This document shows, piece by piece, positions 6,388 to 64,000 of a DNA stretch of 64,000 bases. The notes beneath the pieces were generated by a model. It was given only the letters and a program-made list of their open reading frames with translations, was not told where the DNA came from and made no database searches. This DNA comes from Euprymna scolopes (taxonomy: Eukaryota). Within the stretch, counting starts at the first letter, position 1, and each line of letters begins with the position of its first letter. The DNA lies in NCBI GenBank assembly GCA_053919585.1, contig CM132787.1; one strand, written 5' to 3'. The position numbers were made by a program, and so were the translations under genes.

Positions 6388-6994
6388 TTTATGTATTTCG
6401 GAATTATGAATGTTTATCGGGATTTCTATGAACAATATCTCATACATCCACTGTTAATCCAAAATCCTCCAGTATAAAAGCGAATTGACTGCTTTAACAG
6501 TACTCGCTGTAAAACGTTAGACCATTGCCGATTATATATCCTGGCAAACCGTTTATACTTCTGAATTGATTGTTACTTTGTCATTCTTTTATTTGAATAT
6601 ACGTCAACCAGATTAAAGGTAGTTTGACTTATAATATATTATAGAAAATTATGTTTCAACCAAATTTTTGTCTTTATTAGATTTACAAATTGTTTATTAT
6701 TAGTTTGAGTAGTATTATTATTAGTAGTATAGTATTAATATTAGCATAAGTATTGGTGGTTGGAGTAGTTGTGTTCTTGTTGCTCCTGATGTTACTGATA
6801 TAATTATAACCATCAGGGAAACCAGAGGTTCTCATTATTGAATCAAGACTATTACTATGACAGTTTCATCATGCTCTAAACACTATATAGCTTCCGTTTT
6901 TTTTCCAATTATGCTGCATAGTTCGAAGGATGTCAAAACATCGTTAAACTCATGACTATATATATATATTAATTGTCTGTATTTTTGAGATGAG

Positions 6995-7719
6995 TTGTTT
7001 TCATTGATTGAGATTGTCGGACTGACTTCCTCATCTTGGTTGTAATTGTCACAACGTTTCGGCCGTTTTGCCCTCCGGCCTTCGTTAGGTGAACGGTTTG
7101 TTAGGAGTCTCGAACCCAACCCTTTATTATTATTACGGGGGTACCGTGTTCGGACTCCAGCTAGGCTTTGGGACATAGTTGCTGGTTCTCTGTTTTTCAA
7201 TGTTACTTTTTCACTGCCTTCGTTCAGGATGTTGTTATTCAAGGTTTTCTCTCTCTATCAGAGGTGTCCAAATTGCATTCAGCTCTATGCTTGGTTTGCT
7301 CAGTAGGTTTTTATGTCCGAGCATGTGAGCTGTTTCTTTAAGTTTTCTCACTTTCCAGTTCTCTCTGTTTATTATTTTTACTTCATCCCATAGGGGGCGA
7401 TGACCCCCCTCTCCATCCAGACATGGTTGGCTATACCCGATTTTTCGTCTCCCCTTTAGTTACCGCTTTTCGGTGTTCTTCCACCCTTACTTTAAGGGGG
7501 CGGCATGTTTCACCCTTGTAAACCTTTCTGCAACTGCATGGGATGGAGTATATGCAGTGTTTGGTCATGTTCTCATCCATGCGGGGCTTCACTCGTACCA
7601 GGTGTCGTCTGAGTGTCGACTCGCTTTTGAATACCGTCCTGATGTTGTAGGGCGCACATATTCTCTGAATCTTTTCGGAGATGCCTCGTATGTATGGTAG
7701 GCAGACCGTTGGAGGTTTT
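6995..7719 (-). mobile_element. Penelope-like retroelement 3' end (GIY-YIG endonuclease plus 3' terminal region), cut by a gap
   Basis: Manual minus-strand translation gives TVCLPYIRGISEKIQRICAPYNIRTVFK...CIYSIPCSCRKVYKGETCRPL/KVRVEEH...SGIANHVW, the Penelope/Poseidon-type linker and GIY-YIG motif, with frameshifts. A hammerhead motif follows downstream. Confidence 0.92.
7049..7092 (-). ncRNA. Minimal type I hammerhead ribozyme (PLE-associated), core mutated
   Basis: Minus strand: UCAC-CUAACGA-A-GGCCG(GAGGGCAAAA)CGGCC-GAAA-CG-UU-GUGA. Stem I UCAC/GUGA, 5-bp stem II, palindromic minimal stem III, and a G5-to-A core change. Confidence 0.8.
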
Positions 7720-11250: not shown

Positions 11251-12117
11251 TATAGCATTATTCTTATAAATTTATATTATATGTTCCATTAATTATTTGC
11301 GTAATAATCATCCTGATCCTGTCTAACTTCGTGTTTCGACTTTCTGAAAGAACTATTAAAATTAGTTTTTTTTTTAATATATAGCGATTATCGTAAACAA
11401 AAATCACTTATAAGGAGCGTAACTATAATATTTCGTATATTTGATATGACATTTTATTAAGATCAATGTACAAAATACATATAAGTGTTTAAATCTAAAA
11501 TAATGTCTTCAATTTTTTATTGAGTCAGAATGGATAAAAAAGGATTGACAACTACATGGTTATGATGCATTAACTTTTGCATTCATAACATGGAACTTGA
11601 ATGTACATGTTGCTTGAATTGACGGTTTGAGACTAAGAACGATTTCCCTCTCATAGAAGTGCGTCAAAAGCAGAGATGTATAATTGAATTCCTCTAGGCC
11701 AAAACATCTATTGATTAACATTATCCGCTCATATTGTATGTTTATACAACCGATTGTAACGAGATGGGTTCGTTTAGTTGAAAGTGACCATCGGGATCTG
11801 AATAACGAAGCGCGCTTCGGGCGCTCATGCTAAATCAACACCCGGGAAAATATTGCACGCCTCCACACTCTAATTCGCGCTGACCCATGAATAGCGGTCA
11901 ATGTAAAGAGAGTTTAATGTTCATGTTAGTGCACTTGAGAATATGTTGTCATATTTAAGTGTGAGCTATGTGGATTCACCGAATTCAAACGCAGAATCAT
12001 ACTGTCAACGGCCGAGATATCTGTCTGGACTTTTTGATTCAGTACAAAAGTGAAGGTGACAGGATCTATGATTGCAATATAACTAGTTACGAATCGTATT
12101 GTTACAACTACGAGCCG

Positions 12118-12195
<78 letters not shown>

Positions 12196-12251
12196 CCTTA
12201 ATTGGAATTCATTTTTTGAGATGAGCATTATATATTAATTTTTTCTTTTTA

Positions 12252-12377
12252 TTATTTCGGACTATTAGTCTCATCTTTATCTGACGAAGGCCAGAGGAAG
12301 TTGGCCGAAACGTTGTGAACCAATAAAAAGATCCAAAAACAACAACTAATAAAGATGAGACTAATAGTCCGAAATAA
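12252..12377 (+). mobile_element. 126-bp foldback element: perfect 29-bp inverted repeats enclosing a hammerhead (PLE 3'-end derivative)
   Basis: TTATTTCGGACTATTAGTCTCATCTTTAT (12252-12280) is the exact reverse complement of 12349-12377. The downstream motif AAGATGAG.......AGTCCGA is shared with the PLE end at ~7016-7036. Confidence 0.85.
12276..12319 (+). ncRNA. Minimal type I hammerhead ribozyme, intact core
   Basis: UUUAU-CUGACGA-A-GGCCA(GAGGAAGU)UGGCC-GAAA-CG-UU-GUGAA. Stem I has 5 bp with two GU pairs, and AATAAA follows at 12322. Confidence 0.82.
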
Positions 12378-13034
12378 AAAAAAAAATAAAATTAATACGA
12401 GCCAGAATTCAAACGTTATTCTATGAAATAATAAAGAATACACAGGCAAAATTATGTTAAACGTCCTTACGTACAGGATAAGTCGTCTTTATTTTTTAAA
12501 GCACGTGGAAAATTTAACCCTACCCAGCACGTTAAAATGTAGATAAAAGCCATGGATCAACCGTGTAAAAGCATAGAAGTGGAAAATGTTTCGTTTGACT
12601 AACGACAACATACAATTTGGAACACACAGAATATATGAAAATGTTGGAGTGGGCGGTGGTGTCAAATCAACAAAATATTCACGAACTGGCACCATCAGAT
12701 TGCACTTGTTCCCATATCTGAAGGATACATAAAGTGGGCAATATTGTCTTCACAACAACGCAGCCACAAAGACTTTACTGCATCGGTAAACACTGGATTT
12801 TAATGACATAGACATTCATACCTTCCTTCATATCGCTTCGATTTTACTTCACATAAGGGCCTTTCTCTTCAATATGCCTGCANNNNNNNNNNNNNNNNNN
12901 NNNNNNNNNNNNNNNNNNNNNNNNNNNNNNNNNNNNNNNNNNNNNNNNNNNNNNNNNNNNNNNNNNNNNNNNNNNNNNNNNNNNNNNNNNNNNNNNNNNN
13001 NNNNNNNNNNNNNNNNNNNNNNNNNNNNNNNNNT

Positions 13035-13243
13035 CACATAAAATTAATATACGAAAGTAGAGATTTATGGGTAAACTTTAAGTATTTACTTCAAAAGTGT
13101 TCAATACGTAGGTAGAACTAGTTAGTAAGTTATAAAATGTATATGGCGATTAAGCTACACTGAATATTCCGCGTTTCATCCACTCTAGGACTCTTCAGGC
13201 TTATAAGCTAGCGTAGCGTAATCGCCATATACATTTTATAATT

Positions 13244-13248
<5 letters not shown>
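13035..13248 (-). mobile_element. Hammerhead-bearing repeat (PLE-like terminal region, family 2) with inverted duplication
   Basis: 13035-13203 is the reverse complement of 31660-31830. 13123-13160 and 13211-13248 form a 38-bp inverted repeat with 3 mismatches. Confidence 0.8.
13151..13203 (-). ncRNA. Type I hammerhead ribozyme, GUA cleavage site
   Basis: Minus strand: UAAGC-CUGAAGA-GUCC(UAGAGU)GGAU-GAAA-CGC(GGAAUAUUCA)GUG-UA^GCUUA. All core nucleotides and three stems are present. Confidence 0.88.
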
Positions 13249-13328
<80 letters not shown>

Positions 13329-17866: not shown

Positions 17867-18750
17867 GAGTTTCCTTCAATAAATTTCAATAACCTTTTAG
17901 TATGGTCACTTTCAGTTATATACACACATGGGAGTCAAGTCAACCTCCTATGGTTGCAGTACACTTCTACCATTTCGACAACTTCGGAAATGCCTCATGA
18001 AAGTCCTTTTTTGTGAGCACGTTTATGACCTCCGTCACAGCCTCGTCCACCATGTTTTGCTTGAGCTTAGCGAATAACCAAATATTACAGACAGCAGTAT
18101 CTAAATTATAGAAAGGGGTAGGAAATGGTTAGTGCCAAACTTTGCTCAAATTGTTTGTGACAAAAACGCATCACCCTTTAGATAAACATCACACAAATCT
18201 TGTGAGTCTTCAGTTGCTGTAAAACAATTGTAAGCGCAGTTCACTGCACTGATATTAAAACTTTACATTTATTGTATCTATAGACACACAACACCCCTTA
18301 TCTACAACATTCTTAATTTAGCCAATGAATTCTTGTGTTCTGACTTTTACAAAAATCTTCGAGAATTCTCGTAATCCCCCAAAGACTGCTTGTCTTCCTT
18401 GAATCTTTTATGCAACTCAGAAACTGATTCATGCAAGATGGTTCTTAACAAACCAAAATATTCCGCGTTTTTTTCATTGTGTCCAAATTAAAAACATGAT
18501 TTTATTGCATATAGTTCTTCTAAGGTTTCCGCACACGCAGAGTGCATTTTTGAAATTCATCAGCTTTAATGATCAAATATTAGTAAAATGTAGTCAATAC
18601 CTGTTGTATTTAGTTATTGAAACTTGAATTCATAAACATTAGTCAGACATATCCCAGTATGTATGGCAAAAAAAACGTATTGAAGTTCCAATCGTCTGCG
18701 GCAATTATAACACTTGCCCAATCGGATATTATTTTTAAATTTAAAACGAT
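17866..18750 (-). mobile_element. Degenerate mariner-type DNA transposon
   Basis: TA followed by a CGAG...CAATAAATTTC terminus. The minus strand retains the C-terminal pattern EAVTEV...FHEAFPKLSKW*KCTATIGG. The far boundary is uncertain. Confidence 0.6.
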
Positions 18751-31424: not shown

Positions 31425-31832
31425 CTTGTTTTTATATATGTTGAGGATTTCTAGTTAGCATATCAGCTATTATTATATAAAAAAAGGAAGGGAAAATCCA
31501 CCGTAAACCACTAACCTAGTTCTAAAACATATCCTTTGTTCGATAAAATGCATGCCCATTGGCTGATAGGAAGGGGCGCGGTGGATACTAGAAAGCTGAT
31601 TGGGTAACTAAAAATCCTCAACAAATATAAAAACAAGAAGCAACCACAGAATTCGCGCATAAGCCTGACGAATCCTATAGTGGATGAAACGCAGAAATAT
31701 TCAGTGTAGCTTAATCGCCATATGTATATTATAAATTACTAACAAGCTCTACTTACGTATTGAGCACTTTTGAAGTAAATACTTAAAGTTTACGCATAAA
31801 TCTATACCTTCGTATATTAAATTTATGTGAGT
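31425..31832 (+). mobile_element. Hammerhead-bearing PLE-like terminal repeat (family 2) with a 44-bp inverted duplication
   Basis: 31425-31468 is the reverse complement of 31594-31637 (5 mismatches). Two ATTGG boxes and TATAAAAA precede the hammerhead. The 3' part is homologous to 13035-13203. Confidence 0.78.
31660..31713 (+). ncRNA. Type I hammerhead ribozyme, GUA cleavage site
   Basis: UAAGC-CUGACGA-AUCC(UAUAGU)GGAU-GAAA-CGC(AGAAAUAUUCA)GUG-UA^GCUUA, with predicted cleavage after 31708. Confidence 0.9.
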
Positions 31833-55600: not shown

Positions 55601-58600
55601 TATTGAAATGAGTCTTCAGCTTGTAACTTAATAAATAATAGTCGATCTAATGAAATTATTCTTCAGCTTGTAACTTAATCAACAATGGTCGATCTATTGA
55701 AATGAGTCTTCAGTTTGTAACTTTACGTATAATGGTCGATCTATTAAATGATTCTTCGGTTTGTAACTTAATCAATAATGCTCGATCTATTGAAATGACC
55801 CTTCAGTTTGCAACTTCATGAATAATGGTCGATCTATTGAAATGACTCTTCAGTGTGTAACTTCATCAATAACGGTCGATCTATTGAAATGACTCTTCAG
55901 TTTGTAACTTCATCAACAATGGTCGATCTATTGAAATGACTCTTCAGTTTGCAACTTCATCAATAATGATCGATCTATTGAAATGATTTTCAGTTTGCAA
56001 CTTCATCAATAATGGTCGATCTATTGAAATGACTCTTCAGTTTGCAACTTAATCAATAATGGTCGATCTATTGAAATGACTCTTCAGTTTGTAACTTCAT
56101 CAATAACGGTGGATCTATTGAAATGACTCTTCAGTTTGCAACTTCATCTAAAATGGTCGATCTATTGAAATGATTATTCAGCTTGTAACTTAATCAATAA
56201 TGGTCGATCTATTGAAATGATTCTTCAGCTTGTAACTTAATCAATAATGGTCGATCTATTGAAATAATTCTGCAGCTTGTAACTTTATCAATAATGGTCG
56301 ATCTATTGAAATGATTCTTCAGCTTGCAACCTTATCACTAACGGTCGATCTATTAAAATGATTCTTCAGCTTGTAACTTAATCAATAATGGTGTATCTAT
56401 TGAAATGATACTTCAGCTTGTAACTTAATAAATAATGGTCGATCTAATGAAATATTCTTAACCTTGTAACTAAATCAACAATGGTCGATCTATTTAAATG
56501 AGTCTTCAATTTGTAACTTAACGTGTAATGGTCGATCTATTAAATGATTCTTCGGTTTGTAACTTAATCAATAATAGTCGATCTATTGAAATGACTCTTC
56601 AGTTTGCAACTTCATCAATAATGGTCGATCTATATTAATGACTCTTCAGTTTGCAACTTCATCAATAATGGTCGATCTATTGAAATGACTCTTCAGTTTG
56701 CAACTTCATCAATAATGGTCGATCTATTGAAATGACTCTTCAGTTTGCAACTTCATAAATAATGGTCGATCTATTGAAATGACTCTTCAGTTTGCAACTT
56801 CATCAATAATGGTCGATCTATTGAAATGACTCTTCAGTTTGCAACTTCATCAATAACGGTCGATCTATTGAAATGACTCTTCAGTTTGCAACTTCATAAA
56901 TAATGGTCGGTCTGTTGAAATGACTCTTCAGTTTGCAACTTAATCAATAACGGTCGATCTAGCGAAATGAGTCTTCAGTTTGCAACTTCATCAATAATGG
57001 TCGATCTATTGAAATGACTCTTCGGTTTGTAACTTGATCAAAAATGGTCGATCTATTGAAATGGCTCTTCGGTTTTCAACTTGATCAATAATGGTCGATC
57101 TATTGAAATGACTCTTCAGTTTGCAACTTCATCAATAATGGTCGATCTATTTAAATGACTCTTCAGTTTGTAACTTCATCAATAATGGTCGATATATTGA
57201 AATGACCCTTTAGTTTGCAACTTCATGAATAATGGTCGATCTCTTGAAATGACTTTTCAGTCTGTAACTTCATCAATAATGGTCGATCTTTTGAAATGAC
57301 TCTTCAGTTTATAACTTCATCAACAATGGTCGATCTATTGAAATGACTCTTCAGTTTGCAACTTCATCAATAATGATCGATCTATTGAAATGATTTTCAG
57401 TTTGCAACTTCATCAATAATGGTCGATCTATTGAAATGACTCTTCAGTTTGCAACCTCATCAATAATGGTCGATCTATTGAAAGAACTCTTCAGTTTGCA
57501 ACTTCATCTATAGTGGTCGATCTATTGAAATGATTCTTCGGTTTGCAACTTCATCAATAACGGTCGATCTATTGAAATGACTCTTCATGTTGCAACTTAA
57601 TCAATAATGGTCGATCTATTGAAATGACTCTTCAGTTTGCAACTTCATGAATAATGGTGGATCTATTGAAATGACTCTTCAGTTTGCAACTTCATTTATA
57701 ATGGTCGATCTATTGAAATGACTCTTCAGTGGGTAACTTCACTAATAACGGTCGATCTATTGAAATGACTCTTCAGTTTGTAACTTCATCAATAATGGTC
57801 GATCTATTGAAATGACTCTTCAGTGTGTAACTTTATCAATGACGGTCGATCTATTGAAATGACTCTTCAGTTTGTAACTTAATCAATAATGTCGATCTAT
57901 TGAAATGATTCTTCTGTTTGTAACTTCATCAATAATGGTCGATCTATTGAAATTAGTCTTCTGTTTGCAAATTCATCAATAATGGTCGATCTATTGAAAT
58001 GACTCTTCAGTTTGTAACTTAATCAATAATGGTCGATCTATGGAAGTTATTCTTCAGTTTGCAACTTCATCAATAATGGTCGATCTATTGAAATTACTCT
58101 TCAGTTTGAAACCTAATCAATAATGGTCGATCTATTGACATGACTCTTCAGTTTGCAAATTCATCAATAATAGTCGATCTATTGAAATGACTCTTCAGTT
58201 AGTAACTTCATCAATAATGGTCGATCTATTGAAATGACTCTTCAGTTTCCAACTTAATCAATAAGGGTCGATCTATTGAAATGATTCTTCAGTTTGCAAC
58301 TTCATCAATAATGGTCGATCTATTGAAATGACTCTTCAGTTTTCAACTTCATCAATAATGGTCGATCTATTGAAATTACTCTTCAGTTTGCAACTTCATC
58401 AATAATGGTCGATCTATTGAAATGACTGTTCGGTATGCAACTTACTCAATAATGGTCGATCTATTGAAATGAATCTACACTGTGCAACTTCATCAATAAT
58501 GGTCGATCTATTGAAATGACTCTTCAGTTTGCAACTTGATGAATAATGGTCGATCTATTGAAATAACTCTTCGGTTTGCAACTTCATCAATAATGGTCAA

Positions 58601-61600: not shown

Positions 61601-64000
61601 TCGATCTATTGAAATGAGTCTTCGGTTTATAACTTTATCAACAATGGTCGATCTATTGACATGACTTTTTAGTTTGCAACTTCCTCAATCACGGTCGATC
61701 AATTGGGATTATTCTTAAGTTTGTAACTTGATCAATAATGGTCGATCTATTGAAATAATTCTTCGGTTTTTTGAGCTTCATTAATTATGGTGGATCTATT
61801 GAAATGACTCTTCAGTGTGTAACTTCATCAATAATGGTCGATCTATTGAAAGGACTTTGTAGTTGGCAACATCATCTATAATGGTCGATCTTTTGAAATG
61901 ACTCTTCAGTTTGTAACTTCATCAATAATGGTCGATCTAATGAAATTATTCTTCAGCTTGTTTGTTTATCAATAATGGTCGATCTATTGAAATGATTCTT
62001 CAGCTTGTAACTTAATCAATAATGGTCGATCTATTGAAATGATTCTTCCGCTTGTATCTTAATAAATCATTGTTGATATATAAAAATTATTCTTCAGCTT
62101 GTAACTTGATCAATAATGGTCGATTTATTGAAATGATTCTTCGGTGTGTAACTTCATCAATAATGGTCGATCTATTGAAATTACACTTCAGTTTGTAACT
62201 TCATCAATAACGGTCGATCTATTGAAATGACTCTTCAGTTAGTAACTTTATCAATAATGGTCGATCTATTGAAATAGTTCTTCAGTTTTTAACTTCATCA
62301 ATAATGGTCGATCTATTGATATGATTCTTCAGCGTGTAACTTCATCAATAATGGTTGATCTATTGAAATGACTCTTCGGTTTGCAACTTCATCAATAATG
62401 GTTGATCTATTGAAATGACTCTTCGGTTTGTAACTTCATCAATAATAGTCGATCTATTGAAATGACCCTTCAGTTTGTAACTTCATCAAAAATGGTCGAT
62501 CTATTGAAATGACTCTTCAGTTTGTAACTTCATCAATAATGGTCGATCTATTGAAATGACCCATCGGTTTGTAACTTAATCAATATTGGTCGATATATGT
62601 AAATGTCACTTTAGTAAGTGACTTTATCAATAATGGTCGATCTATTGAAATGACTCTTCAGTTTGTAAATTCATCAATAATGGTCGATCTATTGAAATGA
62701 CTCTTCAGTTTGTAAGTTCATCAATAATGGTCGATCTATTTAAATGACTCTTCAGTTTGTAACTTCATCAATAATGGTCGATCTATTGAAATGAGTCTTC
62801 AGTTTGTAACTTAATCAATAAGGGTCGATCTATTGAAATGACTCTTAAGTTTGTAACTTCATCAATAATGGTCGATCTATTGAAATTACCCATCGGTTTG
62901 TAACTTAATCAATAATAGTCGATCTATCGAAATGACACTTCAGTTTGCAACTTCATTAATAATGGTCGATCTATTGATATGACTCTTCAGTTTCTAACTT
63001 ACATCAATAATGGTCCATCTATTCATATGATTCTTCAGGTTGCAACTTCATCAATAACGGTCGATCTATTGAAATGACTCTTCAGTTTGTAACTTCATCA
63101 ATAATGGTCGATCTATTGAAATGACTCTTCAGTTTGCCACTTCATCAATAATGATCTATCTATTGAAATGATTCTTCAGTTTGCAACTCCATCAATAACG
63201 GTCGATCTATTGAAATGACTCTTCAGTTTGTAACTTCATCAATAATGGTCGATCTATTGAAATGACTCTTCCGTTGGCAACTTCATCAATAATGGTCGAT
63301 CTATTAGAATGACTCTTCAGTTTGCAACTTCATCAATAATGGTCGATCTATTGAAATGACTCTTCAGTTTGCAACCTTATCAATAATGGTCGATCTATTG
63401 AAATGACTCTTCAGTTTGCAACTTCATCAATTATGGTGGATCTATTGAAATGACTCTTCGGTTTGCTACTTCATCAATAATGGTCGATCTATTAAAATTA
63501 CTCTTCAGTTTACAACTTCATCAATAATGGTCGATCTATTGAATTACTCTTCGGTATGCAACTTCATCAATAATGGTCGATCTATTGAAATGACTCTTCA
63601 GTTTGCAACTTCATCAATAATGGTCGATCTATTGCAATGACTCTTCAGTTAGCAACTTCATCAATAATGGTCGATCTATTGAAATGACTCTTCGGTTTGC
63701 AACTTCATCAATAATGGTCGATCTATTGAAATGACTATTCAGTTTGTAACTTCATCAATAATGGTCGATCTATTGAAATGACTCTTCAGTTTGTAACTTA
63801 ATCAAAAATGGTCGATCTATTAAAATGACTCTTCAGTTTTTAACTTCATCAATAATGGTCGATCTATTGAAATGACCCATCGGTTTGTAACTTAATCAAT
63901 AATAGTCGATATATTGAAATGACACTTCAGTAAGAAACTTTATAAATAATGGTCGATCTATTGAAATGACTCTTCAGTTTGTAACTTTATCAATAATGGT
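43689..64000. repeat. 47-bp tandem satellite, about 430 units, continuing beyond the window
   Basis: Consensus AATAATGGTCGATCTATTGAAATGACTCTTCAGTTTG(C/T)AACTTCATC, head-to-tail with no spacers. Rare 1-2 bp indels. The unit length is not a multiple of 3. Confidence 0.99.

What the first reader, a model, noticed from the sequence alone, without database searches (positions are those of the whole stretch)
12233..12398. 126-bp foldback mini-element: hammerhead inside a perfect 29-bp inverted repeat
Seen: a perfect 29-bp IR (imperfectly ~48 bp) encloses only a hammerhead core, AATAAA and a short A/C linker. The left arm abuts CUGA exactly and supplies a stem I strand (UUUAU) that still pairs with GUGAA. 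The right arm resembles the PLE 3' sequence at 7.0 kb. It interrupts a much older mariner, and the identical arms imply a recent event. Established: truncated PLE insertions can carry inverted terminal duplications. Inference: either an extreme PLE truncation product or a mobile non-autonomous hairpin-ribozyme unit. UUUAU is shared between the IR and stem I, so the two folds are mutually exclusive and could act as a switch.
Basis: partly seen in the sequence, partly recalled or inferred. Interest (0 to 1): 0.72.

Follow-up and report, generated by a model that had tools for sequence, protein, structure and literature searches.

The report
Inverted double copy of hammerhead retroelement
The hairpin with a hammerhead motif in its loop is real, but it is an ordinary by-product: two shortened copies of a very abundant short retroelement inserted head-to-head in one event, the usual scar of Penelope-like elements.

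Summary
There is a perfect 29-bp inverted repeat (42 nt at 93%) around 68 nt that start exactly at CUGA of a minimal hammerhead motif.

The insertion is larger than reported: about 275 bp (12122-12396), flanked by a 12-13-bp target duplication inside a decayed mariner.

It consists of two 5'-truncated copies of a 454-bp non-coding, hammerhead-bearing element, joined head-to-head. That element has at least 8,563 exact core hits in this 5.9-Gb genome.
- The left copy is inverted and keeps the optional ~47-bp tail plus (TA)n.
- The right copy starts at CUGA and has the short 3' end.

In an unbiased sample of 57 loci I found 42 head-to-head junctions and no tail-to-tail ones. Breakpoints were spread over the whole unit.

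Only three other loci share this junction class. They come from different subfamilies and share no private mutations. That number fits independent pairing of two breakpoints.

CUGA is not a special breakpoint: about 46 copies start there and about 45 start one base later.

The ribozyme-competent fold costs +10.6 kcal/mol against the hairpin, so a switch is unlikely.

This matches the published Penelope-like insertion architecture and in vitro priming from both target strands. Earlier notes of this scan on other DNA of this genome describe a hammerhead-tailed, Penelope-dependent SINE that looks like the same element; I did not compare sequences.

The parts
12110..12121 (+). Left copy of the target-site duplication, ACGAGCCGGAAT (possibly 13 bp starting at 12109)
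   Evidence: Direct reading. Paralogous mariner copies L039 and L040 read ...CTACGAGCCGGAGTCCAAACG... without interruption.
12122..12189 (.). (AT)34 microsatellite lying inside the duplication-bounded insertion, at the outer end of the inverted copy
   Evidence: The same (TA)n follows the long tail in many copies of the family.
12190..12236 (-). Inverted optional 'tail' extension of the element (reverse complement of CATATAATGCTCATCTCAAAAAATGAATTCCAATTAAGGAATAAT)
   Evidence: Reference copy L024:1569-1666 aligns to 12280-12181 at 90%. The tail is present in 11 of 27 copies.
12237..12280 (-). Inverted 5'-truncated copy of the element's 3' region (the left arm of the repeat). The breakpoint corresponds to position ~358 of the 454-bp unit.
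12281..12314 (+). Minimal type-I hammerhead motif: CUGACGA, an unpaired A, a 6-bp helix II, GAAA, and palindromic ACGU in place of helix III. Predicted cleavage lies after U12314. The native stem I 5' strand (GGUUACCAC) is missing.
   Evidence: The architecture fits the min-HHR description in PMC4209133. There is no Rfam hit.
12315..12348 (+). Stem I 3' strand (GUGAACC) and the A/C-rich linker that contains AATAAA
   Evidence: subfamily A linker GATCCAAAAAC.
12349..12396 (+). 3' region of the direct copy (the right arm), ending at the short 3' end ...AAATTAAT(A), with no tail extension
12397..12408 (+). Right copy of the target-site duplication, ACGAGCCAGAAT (1 mismatch, at a CpG)
11684..12800 (+). 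Decayed mariner-type transposon that hosts the insertion (approximate extent; frameshifts and stop codons throughout)

Best explanation
The foldback is the scar of a single integration event of a short non-coding retroelement that uses Penelope-like element (PLE) machinery.

The parent is a 454-bp unit. It has a minimal hammerhead motif about 160 nt from its 3' end, two alternative 3' ends (short, or long with a ~47-bp tail followed by (TA)n), and thousands of copies.

Inferred mechanism: at integration, both strands of the cut target primed reverse transcription.
- One cDNA started beyond the long tail and stopped at unit position ~358. This became the inverted left copy.
- The other started at the short internal site and stopped at position 292, the C of CUGA. 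This became the direct right copy.
- The two cDNA ends were joined without microhomology, leaving a 12-13-bp target duplication.

The hammerhead sits in the loop only because the two truncation points differ. It is a passenger that has lost its native stem I.

Shown here: the anatomy, the duplication, the family, the variability of junctions, and the energetics. Inferred from the literature: priming from both strands and the end-joining step.
For: - Family size. At least 40 copies match CTGA-to-tail at 97-99% but carry a different, conserved upstream sequence ...GGTTACCAC|CTGA. The canonical 26-mer has 8,563 exact hits. The unit is 454 bp and also forms tandem arrays.
- Single event. One 12-13-bp duplication brackets the whole composite, and paralogous mariner copies provide empty sites.
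- Head-to-head is the rule. 42 (-,+) junctions and 0 (+,-) in 57 unbiased loci. Among the first 100 core hits, 13 (-,+) pairs against 0 (+,-).
- Junctions vary. Breakpoints are spread over positions 1-420. The 13 mini-foldbacks genome-wide show many different junctions.
- One arm long, one short. This pairing occurs in 20 of 42 junctions and short/short in none. The window copy has the same asymmetry.
- The same junction arose independently. The window copy and C8 are subfamily A, C18 is B-like, and there are no shared private changes.
- CUGA is not special. About 46 breakpoints fall at C|CTGA, about 45 at C|TGACG and about 15 at A|CCTGA.
- Literature. An inverted 5'-truncated copy adjacent to the element, a 30-40-bp tail often at only one end, and a (TA)n bias are described hallmarks of PLEs (PMC8557442). 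A purified PLE protein cleaves and extends both DNA strands and starts reverse transcription at two adjacent internal sites that delimit the tail (PMC11167929). Dual min-HHRs 100-700 bp apart on opposite strands have been reported (PMC4209133).
Against: - No autonomous PLE sharing this 3' end was identified here, so PLE dependence is inferred from scars and motif.
- The (AT)34 lies inside the duplication although the target is not a microsatellite. Its origin (templated, slippage, or later expansion) is unexplained.
- The arms differ at 3 of the outer 13 positions while the inner 29 are identical. This fits two templates or fast decay of A-runs, but it is not proof of either.
- Four loci share the (358|292) junction class. 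That is within expectation (about 2-3) but at its upper edge.
Confidence: 0.85

Rival explanations
1. A small mobile family: the hairpin-plus-hammerhead unit was itself transcribed and retro-copied, or moved as a foldback/MITE-like DNA element. This would give the 3-4 loci that share the junction.
For: Four loci match the junction pattern, and a fifth near-identical junction lies at C25:103066078. The left end of the window copy, L002 and L003 is in each case the complete inverted tail plus (TA)n.
Against: - The copies sit in different subfamilies and share no private substitutions.
- Junctions differ by 1 nt or 4 nt.
- Right ends differ: short in the window, long plus (AT)n in L003.
- 4 loci is close to the 2-3 expected if ~46 breakpoints at 292 pair independently with the ~4-6% of partners at 355-361.
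- A complete inverted 3' end with (TA)n on the left is what priming from the second strand gives. It is not what the 5' end of a transcript would give.
Confidence: 0.05
2. The foldback arose at the DNA level. Either the first cDNA snapped back and primed on itself, or a palindrome formed or shrank later during replication or repair. Two templates primed from both strands would not then be needed.
For: Some loci are perfect palindromes centred on a short palindromic filler, for example C31:28537194/28537224, which reads ...TCGTCAG-ACGT-CTGACGA.... Long inverted repeats are known to suffer central deletions (general knowledge).
Against: In the window the shorter, inverted arm carries the long tail and (TA)n, which the longer, direct arm lacks. 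Neither arm can therefore have been copied from the other. The outer parts of the arms differ at 3 of 13 positions. Long/short asymmetry is common genome-wide.
Confidence: 0.07
3. The hairpin is exploited by the host or the element. It could be a ribozyme switch, or a precursor of small RNAs made from a transcribed hairpin.
For: The hairpin is very stable (-61 kcal/mol). The family is transcribed on both strands in a poly(A) RNA run. The best Rfam matches are plant miRNA-precursor models.
Against: - The miRNA match scores 28 bits against a threshold of 140.
- The locus's unique flank has zero RNA depth, and reads entering CUGA come from canonical copies: 232 reads carry GGTTACCAC.
- The ribozyme-competent fold costs +10.6 kcal/mol.
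- The arrangement is not conserved among copies.
- Published min-HHRs need a second motif (dimers, or an engineered extended helix III) and cleave poorly in vitro (PMC4209133).
Confidence: 0.03

Closest known systems
Penelope-like element insertion architecture (inverted 5'-truncated copy adjacent to the element, optional 30-40-bp tail at one end); Evgen'ev & Arkhipova 2005, Craig et al. 2021 (PMC8557442)
   Same: - Head-to-head inverted 5'-truncated copy.
- Tail extension on one side only.
- Target duplication of variable length.
- Association with (TA)n.
- Minimal hammerhead in the repeated 3'/pLTR-like region.
   Different: - No RT/GIY-YIG ORF: the parent is a 454-bp non-coding unit.
- Here both copies are so truncated that only about 90 and about 115 bp remain.
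- The tail here is ~47 bp rather than 30-40 bp.
Minimal dimeric hammerheads of metazoan PLEs (Cervera & de la Pena 2014, PMC4209133)
   Same: - Type-I topology and CUGANGA...GAAA core.
[quoted passage not shown]
- Short helix I.
- No helix III loop, with a palindromic ACGU that could pair between two molecules.
- Dual motifs 100-700 bp apart on opposite strands.
   Different: Helix II is 6 bp here, against 7-8 bp in the Schistosoma families. In the window copy the native helix I 5' strand is replaced by unrelated sequence. Activity is untested.
Non-LTR retrozymes / non-autonomous PLE derivatives (Cervera & de la Pena 2020; bioRxiv 10.64898/2026.07.22.740005) and the hammerhead-bearing repeats of Schistosoma (Ferbeyre et al. 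1998)
   Same: Short, non-coding, hammerhead-bearing repeats in thousands of copies, partly in tandem arrays (period ~458 bp at C1:50143618-50147259).
   Different: Most copies here are dispersed head-to-head pairs rather than long tandems. Circular RNAs were not tested. The window copy is a truncated pair, not a unit.
L1 twin-priming inversions (Ostertag & Kazazian 2001; from memory)
   Same: The second target strand primes reverse transcription, giving an inverted segment within one set of target duplications.
   Different: In L1 the inverted piece is an internal, more 5' part of the same RNA. Here both pieces end in the element's 3' end and overlap in content, so both primings start in the 3' region.
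Foldback/MITE DNA transposons and miRNA-like hairpins
   Same: Terminal inverted repeats, a short loop, a stable hairpin.
   Different: The 'TIRs' are two retro-copied 3' ends of unequal length. There are no shared termini or junction across copies, and no family-level Rfam match.

Membership tests
PLE-type (Penelope-like) retroelement insertion, non-autonomous derivative | [quoted passage not shown] | tested here: met
   Window: 12190-12280 inverted, 12281-12396 direct. Family: 42 head-to-head junctions and 0 tail-to-tail in 57 loci.
PLE-type (Penelope-like) retroelement insertion, non-autonomous derivative | Optional tail extension, often at only one end of the insertion, reflecting two internal RT start sites | tested here: met
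   The left arm has the ~47-bp tail and the right arm ends at the short site. Genome-wide: long/short 20, long/long 15, short/short 0. Definition taken from PMC8557442 and PMC11167929.
PLE-type (Penelope-like) retroelement insertion, non-autonomous derivative | Target-site duplication bracketing the whole composite | tested here: met
   ACGAGCC[G/A]GAAT at 12110-12121 and 12397-12408. Paralogous empty sites confirm it.
PLE-type (Penelope-like) retroelement insertion, non-autonomous derivative | Hammerhead motif in the repeated terminal region | tested here: met
   Motif-level match that fits the min-HHR description.
PLE-type (Penelope-like) retroelement insertion, non-autonomous derivative | An autonomous partner with RT and GIY-YIG endonuclease that shares the 3' end | not tested
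   No ORF of 120 aa or more lies near the element or near the 7.0-kb relative. The genome was not searched for the partner. An earlier scan note (s1-279844) also reports that the partner was not found.
Hammerhead ribozyme (type I, minimal/dimeric) | Conserved core C3-U4-G5-A6-N7-G8-A9 ... G12-A13-A14, with helix II and cleavable H17 | tested here: met
   CUGACGA, an extra A, GGCCAG/UUGGCC, GAAA, C-G-U-U|G. H17 = U at 12314.
Hammerhead ribozyme (type I, minimal/dimeric) | Match to a curated covariance model | tested here: not met
   No Hammerhead family is matched at gathering score or at E <= 10, in the window copy or in a canonical copy. This is expected for motifs without a helix III hairpin, but it remains a failed test.
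Hammerhead ribozyme (type I, minimal/dimeric) | Intact helix I | tested here: inconclusive
   The native GGUUACCAC is absent. The substitute UUUAU/GUGAA gives 5 pairs, 2 of them G-U, and is sequestered in the hairpin (+10.6 kcal/mol to free it).
Hammerhead ribozyme (type I, minimal/dimeric) | Self-cleavage | not testable with these tools
   Needs in vitro transcription of monomer and dimer constructs.
Foldback/MITE-like mobile family | Many copies with the same termini and internal junction, each with its own target duplication | tested here: not met
   4 loci genome-wide, from different subfamilies. Junctions elsewhere are variable.
Non-LTR retrozyme | Tandem hammerhead-bearing monomers that give circular RNAs | tested here: inconclusive
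   Tandem arrays of the family exist (L066, period ~458 bp). The window copy is not tandem. Circular RNA was not tested.
tRNA-derived SINE | Recognisable tRNA-like head with A and B boxes | tested here: inconclusive
   Box-like strings (GTGGCGCAGTTGATAG, GGTTTCAATCC) are seen by eye in the 5' part of the unit. ARAGORN and Rfam find no tRNA. The window copy lacks this part altogether.
miRNA precursor | Match to a curated family at its threshold | tested here: not met
   MIR4208 scores 28.2 bits against a gathering score of 140.

The most novel reading that the evidence does not exclude
Head-to-head pairs of this family number more than a thousand by extrapolation, and many form hairpins when transcribed. 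They could act as a genome-wide source of hairpin-derived small RNAs that silence the family and its Penelope partner. The window copy would be one minimal example.

Separately, the rule 'one long tail, one short end, never two short ends' may record how a dimeric PLE complex uses its two internal start sites on the two target strands.
Probability: 0.1. Interest if true: 0.5.

Novelty: new member of a known kind. Interest (0 to 1): 0.2.

Why it matters
For this locus the result is mainly a clean negative: a striking hairpin-with-ribozyme is explained as a routine insertion scar, so it should not be pursued as a new mobile unit or riboswitch-like device.

At family level, the genome holds thousands of natural junctions of a Penelope-dependent short element. 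This is a large natural record of the poorly understood PLE integration mechanism: priming from both strands, two start sites, and joining of the cDNA ends.

Tried and rejected
- Rfam at gathering score and at E <= 10, on the window copy and on a canonical unit: no hammerhead or tRNA, only chance-level miRNA and snoRNA matches.
- ARAGORN on the unit: nothing.
- Pfam on six translated fragments of the window's mariner and on three paralog fragments: nothing. Only the PDB sequence search of a paralog gave Mos1. The window's own fragment did not.
- I suspected a breakpoint hot spot exactly at CUGA, because 6 of 13 mini-foldbacks start there. I rejected this after counting breakpoints at the two neighbouring positions: about 46 at CUGA against about 45 and about 15.
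- I considered snap-back self-priming and rejected it for this locus, because the shorter arm carries tail sequence that the longer arm lacks.
- Laying reads could not show whether the insertion is present in the related species. Run X7 covers only 12627-12800 of the flank. It also could not test small RNAs.
- I did not search for the autonomous PLE partner.
- A BLAST of a whole locus without low-complexity filtering was swamped by (TA)n hits.

Full report
**What is there.**
- The sequence at 12233-12398 contains the reported inverted repeat: arms 12239-12280 and 12349-12390, 42 nt at 93% complementarity, 68 nt apart. The perfect core is 29 bp.
- The 68-nt loop starts exactly with CTGACGA. It then has an extra A, a 6-bp helix II (GGCCAG/TTGGCC), GAAAC, GTT and GTGAACC, followed by an A/C-rich linker containing AATAAA.
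- The CTGANGA...GAAAC pattern occurs six times in the window against 1.17 expected.
- No Rfam family is matched at gathering score or at E <= 10. The same holds for a canonical, full copy of the family.
- The motif nevertheless fits the published 'min-HHR' of metazoan Penelope-like elements: type I, a long helix II with an unpaired base at its 5' end, a short helix I, and no helix III loop, with a small palindrome (here ACGU) that allows dimers (PMC4209133).

**The true extent of the insertion.**
- The left arm continues outward. Reference copy L024:1569-1666 aligns to 12280-12181 in reverse at 90%. Beyond that lies (AT)34, at 12122-12189.
- The composite is bracketed by ACGAGCCGGAAT (12110-12121) and ACGAGCCAGAAT (12397-12408).
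- Paralogous copies of the host repeat read ...CTACGAGCCGGAGTCCAAACG... straight through the site. This is therefore a 12-13-bp target duplication around a ~275-bp insertion.
- The host repeat is an old mariner. Paralogs are only 69-76% identical. A paralog fragment matches Mos1 transposase residues 128-224 at E = 0.0075. The window's own fragments are too decayed for Pfam or PDB searches.

**The parent family.**
- A search of the whole 5.9-Gb genome with the finding gave at least 40 scored copies matching only from CTGA to the tail at 97-99%.
- All of these carry a different, conserved upstream sequence ending in GGTTACCAC, the native stem I strand.
- The canonical 26-mer across that junction has 8,563 exact hits.
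- Homology among copies defines a 454-bp non-coding unit (natural references L066:2599-3052 and L055:884-1337), with CTGA at about position 292.
- The unit has two alternative 3' ends: a short one (...AAATTAA) and a long one with a ~47-bp extension followed by (TA)n.
- It also forms tandem arrays of ~458-bp period, for example four units on the minus strand facing four on the plus strand at C1:50143618-50147259.
- Earlier notes of this scan on other parts of the same genome describe a tRNA-headed, hammerhead-tailed, Penelope-dependent SINE of a cephalopod. My reading was reached independently and agrees. I could not confirm the tRNA head with ARAGORN or Rfam.

**Is the junction a family or a by-product?**
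- The junction-specific pattern occurs at four loci in the genome: the window, C8:40528854 (one T shorter), C18:113150773 (A>G), and C8:158049316 (junction 4 nt upstream). A further near-identical junction was found at C25:103066078.
- The window copy and the first C8 copy carry the subfamily-A linker. The C18 copy carries a B-like linker. No private substitutions are shared. At least two origins are therefore independent.
- For an unbiased view I took the first 100 genomic hits of a 24-mer present in every copy's 3' region, fetched the 57 loci and mapped them on natural reference copies.
- There are 42 head-to-head junctions and no tail-to-tail junction.
- Breakpoints fall all over the unit and are denser towards the 3' end, as expected for 5'-truncated cDNAs.
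- Thirteen 'mini-foldbacks' with at most 30 nt between the inverted tail and helix II exist genome-wide, with many different junctions.
- A second foldback of the same design, from another hammerhead family, lies 0.9 kb downstream in this window.

**Is CUGA a special boundary?** Six of the 13 mini-foldbacks start at CUGA, so I tested for a hot spot.
- Of 67 copies with a non-canonical base before a perfect CTGACG...27-mer, about 46 are true breakpoints with very varied partners.
- One base downstream the estimate is about 45 (13 of 20 sampled, out of 69). One base upstream it is about 15 (11 of 20, out of 28).
- CUGA is not unique. Tens of copies start at any given base in this region.
- About 46 breakpoints lie at 292, and about 4-6% of partner breakpoints lie at 355-361. 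Two or three loci of the window's junction class are therefore expected by independent assortment. Four are seen.

**Mechanism.**
- One target duplication brackets both copies, so they arrived in one event.
- Both outer ends are element 3' ends, so both were made by priming in the 3' region of the RNA.
- The shorter, inverted arm carries the long tail and (TA)n, which the longer, direct arm lacks. Neither arm can be a copy of the other, which excludes simple snap-back synthesis at this locus.
- This is the architecture described for PLEs: an inverted 5'-truncated copy next to the element and a tail extension often at one end only (PMC8557442).
- It also matches the in vitro behaviour of a purified PLE protein. 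[quoted passage not shown] Its hammerhead is not needed for insertion (PMC11167929).
- Genome-wide, 20 of 42 junctions pair a long with a short end and none pairs two short ends.
- Still inferred rather than shown: the joining of the two cDNA ends without microhomology (T|C at the junction), and the origin of the (AT)34.

**The switch idea.**
- UUUAU can pair either with AUAAA of the right arm or with GUGAA. The two folds are exclusive only for these five pairs.
- Forcing the hammerhead-competent fold (stem I formed, core unpaired) gives -50.4 kcal/mol, against -61.0 for the hairpin. The penalty is 10.6 kcal/mol.
- In the published tests a single min-HHR did not cleave; weak cleavage needed dimeric or trimeric constructs or an extended helix III.
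- In a poly(A) RNA run the family is transcribed on both strands. However, 232 reads entering CUGA carry the canonical GGTTACCAC, and the locus's unique flank has no RNA depth.
- Nothing supports a function for this copy.

**Age.**
- The direct arm is 98% identical to a reference copy.
- The duplication has one CpG-type mismatch.
- The arms differ at 3 of their outer 13 positions.
- Twenty-nine identical bases say little at this divergence.
- The insertion is much younger than the mariner, but it is not demonstrably recent.

**Limits.**
- Masked N at about 12880-13030 was left untouched.
- The organism's name is coded in the tools.
- No partner PLE was sought.
- Presence in the sister species could not be read from the contigs.

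Noticed in passing
window 13104-13267 (minus strand): A second mini-foldback of the same design, from a different hammerhead family (CTGAAGAGTCCTAGAGTGGATGAAAC at 13198-13173). It has inverted arms and (TA)n at 13227-13290.
   Followed up: partly
window 6960-7100 (minus strand): A related element 3' end with the same helix II/GAAACGTTGTGA layout, but its core reads CTAACGA (G5>A). Its tail shares the GATGAG...AGTCCGA...CTCATCTCAAAAAT...TTAATATATA motifs. No ORF lies nearby.
   Followed up: partly
G000:C1:50143618-50147259 (L066): A large palindromic array of the 454-bp unit: about 4.9 tandem units on the minus strand face about 4.2 on the plus strand. The period is ~458 bp and units within the array are 99.8-100% identical.
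   Followed up: partly
L051 (G000:C1:12576100-12578600): Tandem runs of a 97-nt mini-unit covering only positions ~357-452 (the 3' hairpin region plus tail), 2 copies on one side and 3 on the other of a head-to-head centre. It looks like repeated copying of the 3' end alone.
   Followed up: no
G000:C31:28537194-28537251 (L140): A perfect palindrome in which both arms start at CTGA, separated by the palindromic filler ACGT. At this locus snap-back synthesis is plausible.
   Followed up: no
L132, L134, L139, L151 (four chromosomes): A recurrent junction class: an inverted copy ending at TTCCTATC (unit ~274) is joined to a direct copy starting at CTGA. It is seen four times. I did not test whether these are independent events or copies.
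   Followed up: no
L066:2680-2775 (5' part of the unit): Strings resembling Pol III A and B boxes (GTGGCGCAGTTGATAG, GGTTTCAATCC). ARAGORN and Rfam find no tRNA.
   Followed up: partly
element 3' region, e.g. L024:1571-1629; window 12351-12357 with the reverse complement of 12218-12224: A conserved AGATGAG...CTCATCT stem encloses the short/long 3'-end boundary. It is also present in the 7.0-kb relative, and could be the RNA structure where reverse transcription starts.
   Followed up: no
window 31665-31690 (+), 18525-18563 (-), 58245-58292 (-), 62990-63038 (-): Further CTGANGA...GAAAC pattern hits. The one at 31665 resembles the 13.2-kb family. The others have long spacers and may be chance.
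   Followed up: no
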